A stretch of 63,820 bases of DNA, filler included, from Octopus bimaculoides (Eukaryota): the NCBI RefSeq assembly GCF_001194135.2. It is 8 parts of 7 records of this genome, joined end to end, with 100 filler letters (N's around TTAATTAATTAA, not from the genome) between each part and the next. Parts side by side here need not be neighbours in the genome. Positions count along the whole stretch, not along the records: positions 28,530 to 34,653 come from NC_068987.1; 7 more parts are not named here. One strand, written 5' to 3'. The notes beneath the pieces were generated by a model that worked only from the letters and a program-made list of their open reading frames with translations, was not told the DNA's origin and made no database searches. Made by a program: the position numbers and the translations under genes. Of this stretch, positions 28,530-34,753 are shown piece by piece. Position 1 is the first letter of the stretch. Each line of letters starts with the position of its first letter.

Positions 28530-29619
28530 GATATAACCATTTTTGTTTGTTTGCTTGTTATATTTATCTCTCTCTTTTTCTTTTTTTTTTTTATCACGCA
28601 AATTTGCAAATACTAGTTACACGAGCTCCTCACACAATGTGCAGAAGCAATGAGGCGGTATATGAGAAGCGGGCTGCTTGGTTGTCAACACAGTTGACGA
28701 GGTCGGCCCACTATTAACAGACAAATAGACGGACAGCTATATGAGTATTTTTTTTTTGTTGTTTTCTTTGAATGCAAGAGATTTCTTTCAAGACGAATGA
28801 AATGAAATGGAAAAATTTTTTGGAAAAAAAAAAAAAAAAGATTTTCTCCATTAAATATGGACGACAACACCTGCTGTCACGTACGATAGTTAGAGCATGC
28901 ATACATCCACACATACACAGACATTCGTACAACCTCCTTTGCACAGGCAAACATGCATGTATGTACAGATACATATGAATGCATACAAACATGCATGGAT
29001 GCTTAAGTGCATGGTGGTCATGTTTCTTTTTCTTTTTTTATTTTATTTTTCCATTTATTTATTGTTTTTTTTATACAGTTGCTCATATAAGTACGTACAT
29101 CACAGCACATCCACGTTGCAATATAGAAAAAATGGGACAAATCAAAATTGCACTAGCTCAACTAGCGAAATGGGTCACTTAGCAGACGGACCTTACTGCC
29201 TTATCGGACCCTGGAATTAGTGATGTGGCACAACGGGAGGAGAGAAAAAAAAAAAGGGGGGGAAAAAAAAAAGATGTTGGTATTATTTGTTGACTGCTTC
29301 CAGAAATGAGAGAAGTTGTTGTTGTTGTTGTTTAATCAATCAGTTTTGGAACAGTCCCAGCAATTTTGACTTGAAGCAGTGTTGGTTGGAGGGTGAGATG
29401 CCAGTATGGCAAAGATATGGGGTTTTATAGGCACTGCCCTGATTATTTACCCACAGACTGACCAGAGGTCAACTTGCTGTTGACAGCAGGATTAAAAGTG
29501 GGTGCATGTTTTCTTTTCACCAACATGTAGGCCATCACCACCACATTGGACACAGCAGTTTCAGGTTGGAAAAAAGACAGTCTGTGACCCTGCATGCAGA
29601 TCGGCTACTGTCTAAAAAC
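28530..29619 (-). other. Probable 3' UTR of liprin-alpha
   Basis: Unique, TE-free sequence with homopolymer runs directly downstream of the stop. AATAAA on the minus strand at 29047-29042 and 29059-29054 are candidate poly(A) signals. Confidence 0.45.
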
Positions 29620-29658
29620 CTAGCATGAATAAACCGTAATAAGTACACATAGATATGA
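29620..29658 (-). CDS. Putative readthrough/recoding extension SYLCVLITVYSC-stop of liprin-alpha
   Basis: In frame after the TGA at 29661-29659, ending TAT TCA TGC TAG. No AG dinucleotide between the TGA and YSC. Confidence 0.5.
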   Translation of the reverse strand, partial: SYLCVLITVYSC

Positions 29659-29931
29659 TCAGTAGTTGCGCATATTTTCTGTGGTCCGGCGAGACATTGA
29701 CGAAGGATCAGGTCCTCGCCGGGTCCGCTGGGGTGACTGTTGCTGTCCTGCAAATGATTCCCCTGTTGTTGTTGTAGTAGTAGTAGTAGTAGTTGTTGTC
29801 GTAGTGGTGCTTGTTGATGCTGGTGTTGCCGACTCAACAGTTTCTTCTGTGGAACCTTCACGGCCTTTTGTATCCTTAGTTTTGAATTTTTTACGCCAAG
29901 ATGGAGCACGTCTGAATTTCCCACCTTCGCC
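29659..29931 (-). CDS. PPFIA1: Terminal coding exon of liprin-alpha (PPFIA/syd-2 family synaptic scaffold); upstream exons not found in this window
   Basis: Long poly-U tract and ...GAATCCAG acceptor (AG at 29933-29932). 90 codons: GEGGKFRRAPSWRKKFKTKD...S(T)15GESFAG...RRTTENMRNY-TGA. FRRAPSWRKKF is the post-SAM3 motif I recall from human PPFIA1. In-frame YSC-TAG downstream matches the liprin-alpha tail. The symbol is used for the family; orthology to one vertebrate paralogue is not implied. Confidence 0.88.
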   Translation of the reverse strand, partial: GEGGKFRRAPSWRKKFKTKDTKGREGSTEETVESATPASTSTTTTTTTTTTTTTTTGESFAGQQQSPQRTRRGPDPSSMSRRTTENMRNY

Positions 29932-29953
29932 CTGGATTCAAAAATGGAACAGG

Positions 29954-29992
<39 letters not shown>

Positions 29993-30581
29993 TGATATAA
30001 ATTTATTAATATTTTTGCAACAAACTGAATGACAGTGTTTAAATGAAACAGATGCTGTAAAAGAAAAAAATTAAATAGATTAAAAAAATATGACAGTAGC
30101 AACAAACTAAATGTTGTAGAGAAGTGAATGACTTCGACAATGAAGAAGGAAACGGCCAGTTTCCATCTCTGATTACTAAACAAGAAGCTACATAATTAAC
30201 TAGACAAATTTTCATAAACAAATAAGAAATAAAAGTTCCTTGGGTTTGTCATTTTTTTATATTTAGAAGATCACTGAAGATAGCAATGCAACATGTGAAC
30301 AGACAAATTTATTTTGAAAAAGAATGTAAGGAGCTCTGTTACCAAGTGGTGAGAAAACACCTATGGTTAAGTACACTATCAAAATATTTGACAAAGAAAA
30401 TTGATTCCAACTAAGATAGTAAATATATATGTAAAAGGAAGAGAAAGAGTTTCTGTCTAATAACACACACACAAACACAAATTATATAGAAAGGAAAATA
30501 ATCTTAAAGACATTCAAAAGATAGCCTGCCAGCTAAATTAGTTGGAAGGTAACAATATAATAAACAGGAGACTTTTGATTG

Positions 30582-30628
<47 letters not shown>

Positions 30629-31131
30629 TAGAGAGAGAGGGAGAGGCAGTGGTTAGGTAGGAGTGAGTAAGCCTCATCATTTTCTAATTTCTAAAACCTA
30701 AATTAATCAATCACTGTACCAAATTTACCCCAGTTCAACATGTCACTGTGAATTACCATTTCCATAGCTTTGTTTTGTACCCCCCCCCCCACACACACAC
30801 ACATACACTGCACTCCCAAGAACCCTGAAGATCCTTCCAAGAGCTTTCTGATTTACAGAGTGCATCAGAAAAGTCTCCCCTATTTTACATGGCTATTGTT
30901 GTGGCACTAGTGAAGTTAGGCAAATGGCAATGGTGTCTGCATGTAGCTAATGTTTTACCATTTTCTTTTACAGTTACTATCATGGCTTGAACCAGTATGC
31001 CCTGTGTTTGCTGTTGAAACATTTATCAAGAATAATAAATGTGAGCAGTCTCTTTTTGCAGCACTTTAAACTTTCAGAACAGGTGGACAGAGTTTCAAAT
31101 GGATTGAGATTTGATTAAGATACTAATTATT

Positions 31132-31352
31132 TCCTTTTGCATTTAAACCAGCAATATCCAACCCAAATACTTTACTTTGTTTTATGTTCAAACTGGCCAG
31201 ATCCAACCTCTTACACCTACCCTACAATGTCATTCTAAAAATAAACAGTCACATTATCAAAATCTCAAAGCTATGAGGTAATGCATGACTAATTCAAAAC
31301 AATGTGAATAAATAGCTGTTACGTTTGACAGAGTAATTTGAATGCAAAAGGG
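31132..31352. mobile_element. piggyBac-like MITE, older copy
   Basis: Same internal sequence as 33973-34190 (CACACCTACCCTACAATGTCATTCTAAAAATAAA); TIR CCTTTTGCATT/AATGCAAAAGGG with eroded TTAA. Confidence 0.8.
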
Positions 31353-33972: not shown

Positions 33973-34190
33973 CCCTTTAGCATTTAAACCAGCCACATCT
34001 GGTCTAAATAGTCTACCTGTTTTATGCTCAAACCAGCCAGATCTGGCCACTCACACCTACCCTACAATGTCATTCTAAAAATAAATAATCACATCACTGA
34101 AATTTTGAAGCTATGAGATAATGCAGGATTAATTCAAAACAATGGGAATAAATAAGCATTACATTTGACAGTTGTCTGAATGCTTAAGGG
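33973..34190. mobile_element. piggyBac-like MITE, 218 bp
   Basis: TTAA|CCCTTTAGCATT...AATGCTTAAGGG|TTAA: TTAA target duplication plus CCCTT TIR. Confidence 0.88.
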
Positions 34191-34753
34191 TTAACTACGT
34201 AACTACACACAAGTAAAAATAAAGAGACCAGCATCGTCCATGCATAAACTGTTTGGCATGCCTCGTTAACTTTGACCAAAAATAATAATGAAATAAAACA
34301 AAAATAAAAACATAAAACTGAAAAAAAGTTGCTAAACTAAACATCAAACTATTTACTACAAATCCTACACCAGAAACACTGATCTAGATTATTTAGCATT
34401 GTCTCAGACTAACTATAGATTACACACACAAACAAACAAAAATTGAAATTTTAAAACAAAGGGGAAAAAAGTTAAAGGGGGGGGGGGGTTAAAAAAAATC
34501 AAAATAAGAAAAAGAATAAAATTTTTTTTAAATGTTTGCCAGGATATGTATGGGGTGTTGAAGAGATTGTTAGTGAACGAGGTGTGTAATACTTAAAACA
34601 ATAAAACTATTAGACAAATTAACTTAAAACACACACACACACACACACACACANNNNNNNNNNNNNNNNNNNNNNNNNNNNNNNNNNNNNNNNNNNNTTA
34701 ATTAATTAANNNNNNNNNNNNNNNNNNNNNNNNNNNNNNNNNNNNNNNNNNNN

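What the first reader, a model, noticed from the sequence alone, without database searches (positions are those of the whole stretch)
29620..29661. Liprin-alpha PDZ-ligand tail (YSC) lies 12 codons behind an in-frame UGA: candidate readthrough or A-to-I stop recoding switch
Seen: the minus-strand frame reads ...ENMRNY-TGA-SYLCVLITVYSC-TAG, and there is no AG between the TGA and YSC, so canonical splicing cannot skip the stop. Established: vertebrate liprin-alpha1 ends in VRTYSC, a motif that binds GRIP-family PDZ domains; coleoid cephalopods recode neural mRNAs extensively by ADAR; UGA edited to UGI is read as Trp. Inference: an exact YSC-stop in the right frame is unlikely by chance (rough codon-frequency estimate around 1e-4 or lower over about 15 positions), so two C-termini, with and without the PDZ ligand, may be produced by readthrough or editing of the stop. 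I am not aware of this being described for a cephalopod synaptic scaffold. Alternatives: base-call error, a private nonsense allele (for example CGA to TGA), or a missing base that would make ACG an ACAG acceptor.
Basis: partly seen in the sequence, partly recalled or inferred. Interest (0 to 1): 0.82.

Follow-up and report, generated by a model that had tools for sequence, protein, structure and literature searches.

The report
Octopus liprin-alpha stop with hidden YSC
The last exon of an octopus liprin-alpha gene ends at a real, conserved UGA that is followed in frame by 12 codons ending in YSC-stop. That stretch sits inside a block conserved as RNA, not as protein, so it is best read as an ordinary stop plus a conserved 3'UTR element, with read-through to a PDZ-binding tail untested.

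Summary
On the minus strand the last liprin-alpha exon (29931-29662) reads ...TTENMRNY, TGA (29661-29659), SYLCVLITVYSC, TAG (29622-29620), with no AG in between.

A spliced RNA-seq contig of the same species matches the genome at 1109 of 1109 bases. This rules out a base-call error, a missing base and splicing inside the stretch.

Three further transcript sequences, from at least one and probably two other coleoid species, keep the TGA, the 12-codon frame and YSC-TAG. Synonymous sites elsewhere in the same gene are saturated between them and octopus (pS 0.77).

The conservation is at the nucleotide level:
- pN/pS in the extension is about 0.65-1.
- Identity is just as high for about 55 nt beyond the TAG.
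- The 124-127 nt upstream exon extension is also 94% identical.

Other evidence bearing on recoding:
- Other lophotrochozoans stop at the same place with TGA, TAA or TAG. Alignment puts that stop where the vertebrate Ser of VRTYSC lies.
- All five assembled transcripts read A at the stop.
- The A has a 5' G, which ADAR disfavours, and is predicted unpaired. The +4 base is U.
- All five transcripts carry an earlier stop (...DEHLI*), so in them this exon is 3'UTR.

Verdict: an ordinary stop inside a conserved RNA block. Functional read-through remains a testable minority possibility (about 0.2). Stop-loss editing is unlikely.

The parts
29932..29990 (-). End of the last intron: long T tract (about 32 T) and cag acceptor (29934-29932).
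   Evidence: Sequence. The junction is used in the spliced transcript L011, whose identity with the genome begins exactly at 29932/29931. The same exon boundary (..YAG|GGN GAA GG) is seen in other molluscs.
29662..29931 (-). Coding part of the last liprin-alpha exon, 90 codons: GEGGKFRRAPSWRKKF...SRRTTENMRNY.
   Evidence: Codons 1-33 carry a clear coding signature between octopus and the other coleoids (pS 0.44-0.49, pN 0.04-0.05; Fisher p = 2.4e-5).
29764..29808 (-). Poly-threonine tract (15 Thr, ACN repeats). Its length and sequence vary between coleoids.
29659..29661 (-). TGA stop codon with +4 base T. It closes the ...RN[YF] tail that is conserved across lophotrochozoans.
   Evidence: TGA in the octopus genome and RNA and in L001, L002, L004 and L012. 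A stop sits at the same position in oyster (TGA), L005 (TGA), L007 and L009 (TAG), L010 (TAA) and L014 (TAA).
29623..29658 (-). In-frame 12-codon stretch SYLCVLITVYSC. It would give a C-terminal Y-S-C only if the TGA were decoded.
   Evidence: The other coleoids read SYLCLLIMVYSC (L001, L002) and SYLCLLNMVYSC (L004, L012), with the same length and frame. There are four variable sites: one synonymous, three non-synonymous.
29620..29622 (-). TAG that ends the 12-codon stretch.
29565..29682 (-). Core of a block conserved at nucleotide level, from about 21 nt before the TGA to about 55 nt after the TAG. Octopus differs from the other coleoids at 5-11% of sites here. Weaker conservation extends to about 29766 upstream and about 29525 downstream.
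   Evidence: Alignments; counts. The comparison with saturated synonymous sites in the SAM region (pS 0.77-0.79) gives Fisher p = 1e-23.
29548..29640 (-). Predicted imperfect hairpin in the proximal 3'UTR. The YSC-TAG nucleotides lie in its 5' arm and the stem core is AGACAGU/ACUGUCU.
   Evidence: The same fold is predicted in three species with z-scores of -1.3 to -2.2. Only one-sided compatible changes are seen and no true covariation, so the support is weak.
28824..29619 (-). Rest of the 3'UTR, covered by transcript L011, with further small islands conserved with L002 (for example 29101-29166).

Best explanation
The TGA at 29661-29659 is the ordinary termination codon of the long isoform of coleoid liprin-alpha. 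Translation ends at ...ENMRNY-COOH. This is the normal lophotrochozoan tail and corresponds to the vertebrate ...VRTYSC tail without its last two residues.

The 36 nt behind the stop, the TAG and roughly the next 55-100 nt form the start of the 3'UTR. They lie in a block held constant by selection on the RNA sequence itself: a regulatory or structural UTR element, possibly the predicted hairpin at 29548-29640. Selection on an encoded peptide is not what holds it constant. The in-frame YSC-TAG is carried along by that constraint.

In the only mRNA form actually seen, in five contigs, the preceding exon is extended by 124-127 nt through a downstream 5' splice site. That extension ends the reading frame earlier (...RRLDE-VHSR[L/P]PLSVQGPPSWDEHLI*), so the whole exon discussed here is 3'UTR in that isoform.

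Shown: the sequence, its conservation, the isoform, and the lack of a codon-level signature. Inferred: that the block acts as an RNA element, and that read-through, if any, is only background.
For: 1. A stop directly after N[Y/F] is found in every lophotrochozoan exon recovered, and with all three stop codons. MAFFT aligns MRNY-- under GRTFSQ and VRTYSC.
2. Between octopus and the other coleoids, synonymous sites in the SAM region are saturated (pS 0.77-0.79). The TGA-to-TAG stretch differs at only 3-4 of 42 nt, and the next 55 nt at 4-6 of 55. There is no step at the TAG.
3. In the extension pS is 0.11 and pN 0.07-0.11, with substitutions at codon positions 3, 1, 2 and 2. That is no coding signature, in contrast with codons 1-33 of the same exon (pN/pS about 0.1, p = 2.4e-5).
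4. The upstream 124-127 nt exon extension, partly behind its own stop, is equally conserved at 94%. The constraint is therefore regional.
5. L011 is 100% identical to the genome over 1109 nt, with no A-to-G change anywhere. L001, L002, L004 and L012 also read TGA.
6. The +4 base is U. The A of the UGA has a 5' G and a pairing probability of 0.02. No SECIS or any other Rfam family reaches threshold.
7. A review states that PDZ-binding motifs occur in vertebrate liprin-alphas but not in invertebrate homologs (PMC8044993).
Against: - An in-frame YSC directly before the next stop has a chance of only about 1.8e-4, and this explanation treats it as coincidence or relic.
- No indel and no stop occurs inside the 12 codons in four distinct coleoid sequences, while a length-variable C run starts 15 nt after the TAG.
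- The three non-synonymous changes lie in the middle of the extension. SYLC and VYSC are invariant, as expected if only the last residues mattered.
- UGA is the leakiest stop codon.
- The RNA function of the block is not identified. The fold z-scores are weak (-0.16 for 191 nt; -1.3 to -2.2 for the hairpin) and there is no covariation.
- Assembled contigs show only majority bases, so editing or variants below about 50% would be missed.
Confidence: 0.6

Rival explanations
1. Functional translational read-through. A fraction of ribosomes decode the UGA (as Trp, Arg or Cys) in the isoform that reads this exon. This makes liprin-alpha with a 13-residue extension ending in Y-S-C-COOH, a class II PDZ ligand like the vertebrate one. 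The conserved RNA just downstream would help or regulate read-through.
For: The chance of YSC-stop is about 1.8e-4. The TGA, the frame, the length and VYSC-TAG are identical in octopus and in three further coleoid sequences despite saturated neutral divergence. There are no indels within the extension, but there are just after it. UGA is the leakiest stop codon (established knowledge). A conserved predicted hairpin follows.
Against: There is no coding signature (pN/pS 0.65-1). Conservation is equally strong after the TAG and in the upstream non-coding extension, so it says nothing specific about translation. The +4 base is U, not C, and there is no CUAG-type context. The hairpin starts about 21 nt after the UGA and contains the second stop, unlike known stimulators that start about 8 nt downstream. 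The extension is hydrophobic (LCVLITV). Other molluscs use TAA or TAG here and have no such tail. Every transcript seen terminates upstream of this exon.
Confidence: 0.2
2. A-to-I stop-loss editing. ADAR converts the UGA to UGI, which is read as Trp, in neural tissue and so switches on the YSC tail.
For: Stop-loss editing is a recognised class in coleoid editomes (PMC8382921). Coleoid mRNAs are heavily edited (PMC4384741). Nucleotide-level conservation around the site resembles what is described around conserved editing sites (own knowledge: Liscovitch-Brauer et al. 2017, which could not be read here).
Against: The target A is preceded by G, the least favoured 5' neighbour for ADARs, and followed by U (established knowledge; sequence). 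Its predicted pairing probability is 0.02 and no long duplex is found. L011 shows no A-to-G difference from the genome in 1109 nt, and four other contigs read A. The protein searches found no ORF with W at this place. The oyster proteins that show W are code-4 translation artefacts.
Confidence: 0.04
3. Evolutionary relic. The downstream YSC is left over from an older or duplicated copy of the C-terminal coding sequence, displaced by small duplications or indels. It is no longer translated and survives only because it lies in the RNA-constrained block. This reading of the motif's origin is compatible with the best explanation.
For: The tail region is prone to small tandem duplication: oyster carries an in-frame 30-nt copy of the tail including its TGA. 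A non-coleoid mollusc-like contig, L005, has RTYSC in the +1 frame 10 nt after its TGA, not followed by a stop (chance about 3e-5). Relatives such as L006 and P0012 still end in RTFSQ-stop.
Against: The similarity between the L005 and coleoid 3'UTRs is not significant, so homology of the two YSC stretches is unproven. Truncation at N[Y/F] looks ancient, being shared by bivalves, coleoids and other groups, and a neutral relic should not last that long. No clear repeat unit can be shown in the coleoid sequence.
Confidence: 0.12
4. Artefact or private allele: a base-call error, a nonsense polymorphism of the sequenced animal, or a lost base that hides an AG acceptor.
For: None was found.
Against: An independent RNA-seq contig is identical over 1109 nt and is colinear with the genome. 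The same TGA and spacing occur in the other coleoids.
Confidence: 0.01

Closest known systems
Vertebrate liprin-alpha C-terminal class II PDZ-binding motif (VRTYSC-COOH), which binds GRIP1 PDZ6 (PDB 1N7F)
   Same: It is the same gene family and the same exon motif (FRRAPSWRKKF). The hypothetical extension would end in the identical Y-S-C-COOH.
   Different: By alignment the vertebrate YSC corresponds to the octopus NY-stop, not to the downstream YSC. The octopus YSC lies behind a stop codon and is preceded by a hydrophobic stretch instead of ..DTATVRT. The vertebrate tail is encoded by a separate last exon: the genomic ORFs P0022 and P0026 break after SPMDG. PBMs are reported as absent from invertebrate homologs (PMC8044993).
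Vertebrate liprin-alpha1 splice isoform lacking the PDZ-binding motif
   Same: Two C-termini arise from one gene. Here the coleoid transcripts also show an alternative C-terminus (...DEHLI*) made by alternative 5' splice site use (literature).
   Different: The coleoid switch that was actually observed is made by splicing, upstream of the exon in question. Neither of the two demonstrated coleoid ends (..DEHLI inferred from RNA, ..MRNY inferred from conservation) carries YSC.
Functional translational read-through that exposes a cryptic C-terminal short motif (for example the peroxisomal signals of mammalian LDHB and MDH1, AQP4 extended form, and Drosophila read-through genes); from own knowledge
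   Same: A UGA stop, a short in-frame extension conserved between species, and a functional motif exactly at the new C-terminus.
   Different: The known cases have a leaky context (UGA-C, UGA CUAG) and/or a protein-coding substitution signature in the extension, plus experimental support. Here the context is UGA-U, there is no coding signature, and there are no data on translation.
Stop-loss A-to-I editing in coleoid cephalopods (Shoshan et al. 2021, PMC8382921)
   Same: A coleoid neural gene with an in-frame stop followed by an open frame.
   Different: The paper describes UAG to UGG, where the A has the favoured 5' U and 3' G. Here the A of the UGA has a 5' G, and no A-to-G change is seen in any assembled transcript.
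Deeply conserved 3'UTR or alternative-exon blocks (regulatory UTR islands, conserved poison-exon-like extensions); from own knowledge
   Same: Nucleotide-level conservation far above neutral, indifferent to reading frame and to stop codons, spanning an alternatively spliced extension with a premature stop 61-64 nt before the last junction.
   Different: No trans-acting factor, microRNA site or validated structure has been identified for this block.

Membership tests
Liprin-alpha (PPFIA / SYD-2) C-terminal exon | Lies directly downstream of the third SAM domain in the mRNA | tested here: met
   The transcripts L001 and L011 join the SAM-domain ORF to this exon. P0027 has a Pfam SAM_2 hit, and the homologs found are named liprin-alpha.
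Liprin-alpha (PPFIA / SYD-2) C-terminal exon | Conserved FRRAPSWRKKF motif followed by a basic or Ser/Thr-rich tail | tested here: met
   R7-F16 and K19-D20 are invariant across molluscs and vertebrates.
Liprin-alpha PDZ-binding motif (class II, ..Y-S-C-COOH) | Y-S-C immediately followed by a stop codon | tested here: met
   TAT TCA TGC TAG at 29631-29620, conserved in four coleoid sequences.
Liprin-alpha PDZ-binding motif (class II, ..Y-S-C-COOH) | Is part of the translated protein (no stop codon before it) | tested here: not met
   An in-frame TGA lies 12 codons upstream in the genome and in all RNA contigs. Whether that stop is bypassed could not be tested.
Liprin-alpha PDZ-binding motif (class II, ..Y-S-C-COOH) | Positional homology with the vertebrate VRTYSC | tested here: not met
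   MAFFT places MRNY-stop under VRTY(SC) and GRTF(SQ).
Programmed stop-codon read-through | In-frame extension without stops or frameshifts, conserved between species | tested here: met
   Twelve codons of the same length in octopus, L001/L002, L004 and L012. This holds only within coleoids and is absent from other lophotrochozoans.
Programmed stop-codon read-through | Protein-coding substitution pattern in the extension (excess of synonymous change) | tested here: not met
   pS 0.11 against pN 0.07-0.11: one synonymous and three non-synonymous changes (Fisher p = 1.0). Power is low because there are only four variable sites.
Programmed stop-codon read-through | Leaky stop context (UGA followed by C, or the CUAG motif) or a stimulatory structure about 8 nt downstream | tested here: not met
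   The context is UGA-UCA. The predicted hairpin begins about 21 nt downstream, with z-scores of only -1.3 to -2.2.
Programmed stop-codon read-through | Ribosome footprints or peptides beyond the stop | not testable with these tools
A-to-I stop-loss editing (ADAR) | A in the genome, G in the RNA | tested here: not met
   L011 matches the genome at 1109 of 1109 positions, and the other four contigs read TGA. Only consensus bases are visible, so low-level editing is not excluded.
A-to-I stop-loss editing (ADAR) | Favourable neighbours (5' U or A, 3' G) and a double-stranded context | tested here: not met
   The neighbours are 5' G and 3' U. The pairing probability of the A is 0.02, and the fold z-score is -0.16.
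Selenocysteine UGA | SECIS element in the 3'UTR | tested here: not met
   The Rfam scan of 28530-30100 at E<=1 gives no SECIS, only sub-threshold microRNA and snoRNA noise in a low-complexity stretch.

The most novel reading that the evidence does not exclude
Coleoid cephalopods give part of their liprin-alpha a vertebrate-type class II PDZ ligand (..VYSC-COOH) by decoding a deeply conserved UGA, through read-through or, less likely, editing. The surrounding ultra-conserved RNA block would act as the control element. This would be a recoding-based, convergent counterpart of the vertebrate splice switch between PBM-plus and PBM-minus forms, in a lineage whose liprin-alpha is thought to lack a PBM.
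Probability: 0.2. Interest if true: 0.75.

Novelty: new member of a known kind. Interest (0 to 1): 0.4.

Why it matters
If the stop is simply a stop, the useful results are descriptive.
- Molluscan liprin-alpha ends two residues short of the vertebrate PDZ ligand.
- Coleoids have an abundant alternative C-terminus (...DEHLI) made by a conserved 124-127 nt exon extension.
- About 500 nt of the 3' end of the mRNA is conserved between octopus and distant coleoids far beyond neutral expectation. This marks an unknown RNA-level function in a key synaptic scaffold gene.

If the UGA is decoded even partly, it would add a clean example of a cryptic PDZ ligand exposed by recoding. It would also link liprin-alpha to GRIP-type partners in cephalopod synapses. 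That is cheap to test with existing RNA-seq, Ribo-seq or proteomics data, or with a reporter.

Tried and rejected
- Oyster proteins P0007-P0009 with W at the stop looked like recoding. The DNA has TGA and the proteins had been translated with a TGA=Trp table. Likewise the QQ in P0010 contains a TAG read as Gln.
- Apparent nucleotide homology between the L005 and coleoid 3'UTRs (GTACTTATT / TTATTCATG / CCGAT.TGCAT) is not better than shuffles: 75-82 of 500 shuffles score as well.
- The search for a long duplex around the stop found only poly-A/poly-T matches. The single-sequence fold has z = -0.16. RNAalifold found no compensatory pairs.
- Rfam gave no SECIS, no microRNA and no other family at threshold.
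- The preceding exon and its extension are not in the 6.1 kb piece, so the splice sites of the alternative extension could not be examined in the genome.
- Literature searches found no paper combining liprin with cephalopod editing and none with liprin-alpha plus TYSC. The SRA run numbers are not mentioned in any held paper, so the species of L001, L004, L005 and L012 remain unnamed. The 2017 Cell paper on cephalopod editing is not held, and the large editing-site tables are not available.
- The protein databases hold almost no full-length eukaryotic gene models for this exon. Annotated cephalopod C-termini could therefore not be compared.
- Two simulation scripts timed out. The analytic estimate was used instead.
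Full report
**1. The observation**

On the minus strand the piece contains the last exon of a liprin-alpha gene.
- A run of about 32 T and a cag acceptor (29934-29932) precede the exon.
- The frame starting at 29931 reads GEGGKFRRAPSWRKKFKTKDTKGREGSTEETVESATPASTS(T)15GESFAGQQQSPQRTRRGPDPSSMSRRTTENMRNY.
- It is followed by TGA (29661-29659), SYLCVLITVYSC (29658-29623) and TAG (29622-29620).
- There is no AG between the two stops.
- With the base composition of the local 3'UTR, the chance that the first in-frame stop is preceded by Y-S-C is 1.8e-4.

**2. The bases are real and nothing is spliced out**

A protein search with the upstream SAM region led to a Logan RNA-seq contig, L011 (SRR32601320).
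- It is a spliced transcript of the same species.
- Its nucleotides 779-1887 are 100% identical to window 29932..28824.

This confirms the acceptor and shows a 3'UTR of at least 796 nt colinear with the genome. It excludes a base-call error, a missing base that would create an acceptor, and any intron between the TGA and YSC. It also shows no A-to-G difference anywhere in 1109 nt.

**3. Which gene, and what the normal C-terminus is**

In transcripts L001 and L011 the exon follows a long ORF with liprin-alpha SAM domains. The motif FRRAPSWRKKF is invariant from molluscs to vertebrates.

Exons from other lophotrochozoans, taken from genomic contigs with the same YAG|GGN GAA GG boundary, end as follows:

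| Source | End of exon and stop |
|---|---|
| Oyster L003 | ...RRTTEHMMNY-TGA |
| P0002 (protein only; no DNA on record, so stop codon not seen) | ...TTEHMRNF |
| L005 | ...STETARNF-TGA |
| L007, L009 | ...TETMRNF-TAG |
| L014 | ...TETMRNF-TAA |
| L010 | ...TETAFNY-TAA |
| L006, P0012 | ...TTENGRTFSQ-TAG |

Vertebrate sequences end ...KRLDTATVRTYSC (P0021, P0043).

MAFFT aligns MRNY-- with GRTFSQ and VRTYSC. The mollusc stop therefore sits where the vertebrate Ser of YSC lies. A stop directly after N[Y/F], written with any of the three stop codons, is the normal state in these animals.

This agrees with the review statement that PDZ-binding motifs are found in vertebrate liprin-alphas but not in invertebrate homologs (PMC8044993). 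VRTYSC is the class II ligand for GRIP (PMC13311821).

Two apparent recoded proteins in the database turned out to be artefacts of translation tables: W for TGA in P0007-P0009 and Q for TAG in P0010.

**4. Other coleoids**

Four further transcript contigs from other runs carry the exon: L001 and L002 (SRR27666071, SRR27666070), L004 (SRR5319792) and L012 (ERR4009645).
- All have TGA, exactly 12 in-frame codons and YSC-TAG.
- L001 and L002 read SYLCLLIMVYSC.
- L004 and L012 read SYLCLLNMVYSC.

In the SAM region, however, octopus differs from L001 and L004 at 77-79% of synonymous sites (saturated) with pN of 0.013-0.022, while L001 against L004 gives dS of 0.28. The comparison therefore spans a deep split, most likely octopod against decapodiform. 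That assignment is an inference.

**5. What kind of conservation it is**

Octopus compared with L001 and L004:

| Region | pS | pN | Raw differences |
|---|---|---|---|
| SAM region | 0.77-0.79 | 0.013-0.022 | |
| Exon codons 1-33 | 0.44-0.49 | 0.04-0.05 | |
| Exon codons 56-90 | 0.19-0.24 | 0.12-0.13 | |
| 12-codon extension | 0.11 | 0.07-0.11 | |
| TGA to TAG | | | 3-4 of 42 |
| Next 55 nt | | | 4-6 of 55 |
| 56-100 nt after the TAG | | | 10-28% |
| 100-200 nt after the TAG | | | about 46% |

- Codons 1-33 show a clear coding signature (Fisher p = 2.4e-5).
- Codons 56-90 are not distinguishable from equal rates (p = 0.53).
- The extension has four variable sites, at codon positions 3, 1, 2 and 2: one synonymous and three non-synonymous (V/L, T/M, I/N).
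- A block from about 100 nt before the TGA to about 100 nt after it is therefore held constant at the nucleotide level, about 90-95% identical where neutral sites are saturated (p = 1e-23). There is no step at the TAG and no codon periodicity.
- The 124-127 nt exon extension upstream (section 6) is likewise 94% identical, including the 61-64 nt behind its own stop.

The conservation of YSC-TAG is real but not specific to it. It says that the RNA sequence matters, not that a peptide is made.

Points that still fit a translated tail:
- There is no indel in the 42 nt, while a C run 15 nt after the TAG varies between 2, 3 and 4 C.
- SYLC and VYSC are invariant.

With so few changes neither point is significant.

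**6.

All five transcript contigs join ...LGTERRLDE to a 124-nt (127 nt in octopus) continuation that begins GTGCAC. This is the 5' splice site read through as exon. It encodes VHSR[L/P]PLSVQGPPSWDEHLI-TGA and is then spliced (...TTCAATG|GGCGAAGG) to the exon studied here.

In this isoform, the only one assembled in five runs:
- The protein ends in ...DEHLI.
- The stop lies 61-64 nt before the last junction.
- The whole GEGGKF exon is 3'UTR.

The isoform that uses the upstream 5' splice site (...RRLDE|GEGGKF...) was not seen. It is implied by the coding signature of codons 1-33 and by conservation of the peptide across phyla. Coleoids therefore already have two C-termini made by splicing, as vertebrate liprin-alpha1 does. 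Neither demonstrated end carries YSC.

**7. Tests of the two proposed mechanisms**

Editing:
- The A of the UGA is preceded by G, the 5' neighbour ADARs disfavour most, and followed by U (established knowledge).
- Squid editing sites show the usual neighbour preferences (PMC4384741).
- Stop-loss editing in coleoids is described for UAG to UGG (PMC8382921).
- In the folded exon the A has a pairing probability of 0.02.
- The 191-nt fold around the stop is no more stable than shuffles (z = -0.16).
- No long complementary partner was found.
- All five contigs read A. Contigs show only majority bases, so low-level editing is not excluded.

Read-through:
- UGA is the leakiest stop codon, but the +4 base is U and there is no CUAG-type context.
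- A conserved imperfect hairpin is predicted at 29548-29640. Its z-scores are -1.3 to -2.2, the same fold is predicted in three species, and only one-sided compatible changes are seen.
- It starts about 21 nt after the UGA and contains the YSC-TAG nucleotides in its 5' arm. That could explain why those nucleotides are fixed, but it is not the geometry of known read-through stimulators.

Selenocysteine: there is no SECIS in the Rfam scan.

**8. Where the YSC might come from**

The coincidence (1.8e-4) is not explained by the best explanation. Three observations suggest the tail region is a place of small duplications and relics:
- Oyster has a perfect in-frame 30-nt tandem copy of the tail including the TGA: CGC ACC ACC GAA CAC ATG ATG AAT TAC TGA / CGA ACC ACC GAA TGC GTG ACG AAC CAT TGA.
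- The non-coleoid contig L005 reads ...RNF TGA TGT GAT TAA. In its +1 frame it reads FDVINRTYSCKVHQ.... This is the exact vertebrate RTYSC, with a chance of about 3e-5 per 60 nt, or about 3e-4 after allowing for the roughly eight species inspected. It is out of frame and not terminal.
- Its apparent nucleotide similarity to the coleoid stretch is not significant.

I cannot tell whether these are relics of an ancestral ..RT[Y/F]SC end, independent accidents, or signs of recoding in several lineages. This remains unexplained (notebook).

**9. Verdict**

Most likely (0.6) the TGA is an ordinary stop, and the 12 codons are the beginning of a 3'UTR that is strongly constrained as RNA.

| Rival | Probability | Note |
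|---|---|---|
| Functional read-through giving a YSC tail | about 0.2 | Legitimate and cheap to test |
| Relic origin of the motif | about 0.12 | Compatible with the main explanation |
| Stop-loss editing | about 0.04 | |
| Artefact | about 0.01 | Excluded |

Compared with what is known, this is a new member of known kinds: a conserved UTR block and an alternative C-terminal isoform in a known scaffold gene. If read-through were shown, it would be a new example of a cryptic C-terminal motif exposed by recoding.

Noticed in passing
L011:652-778; L001:2163-2286; L004 and L012 likewise (the genomic copy is not in the piece): Every coleoid transcript contig extends the exon before the last intron by 124-127 nt through a downstream 5' splice site. 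This gives an alternative liprin-alpha C-terminus ...RRLDEVHSR[L/P]PLSVQGPPSWDEHLI* whose stop lies 61-64 nt before the last exon junction. The extension is 94% identical between octopus and the distant coleoids.
   Followed up: partly
L005:1600-1680: In an unnamed mollusc-like genomic contig the exon ends ...ARNF TGA TGT GAT TAA. The +1 frame starting at the UUU_UGA reads FDVINRTYSCKVHQ..., which contains the exact vertebrate RTYSC but is out of frame and not followed by a stop. UUU UGA U resembles known +1 shift sites. Unexplained.
   Followed up: partly
L003:975-1034: Oyster liprin-alpha has an in-frame 30-nt tandem duplicate of its last nine codons plus the TGA (RTTEHMMNY* / RTTECVTNH*).
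   Followed up: no
P0007-P0009 and P0010: Database proteins that appear to read through the stop (W, or Q) come from gene calling with alternative genetic codes (TGA=Trp, TAG=Gln) on eukaryotic contigs. They are not recoding.
   Followed up: yes
window 29764-29808 (-): A run of 15 threonine codons (ACN repeats) sits in the coding exon. Its length and composition differ between coleoid species, and the tract is absent from bivalves and the other relatives.
   Followed up: no
window 31133-31331 and 33974-34171 (+): Two copies, about 200 nt long and 74-83% identical, of a dispersed repeat lie in the last intron, 2.84 kb apart in the same orientation. They are probably an interspersed (SINE-like) element.
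   Followed up: no
window 29954-29985; 30585-30645; 34629-34653: Simple repeats occur in the intron: a 32-nt A run on the plus strand (the T tract in front of the acceptor), (GA)30 and (AC)12.
   Followed up: no
window 29101-29166 and 28801-28832 (-): Further small islands of the 3'UTR are conserved (83-87%) between octopus and the distant coleoid L002, far from the stop codon.
   Followed up: no
P0022, P0026, L015, L017: In vertebrates the homologous exon ends after ...SPMDG and the last 18 residues (..RLD.ATVRTYSC) lie on a separate final exon. Molluscs have no intron there.
   Followed up: partly
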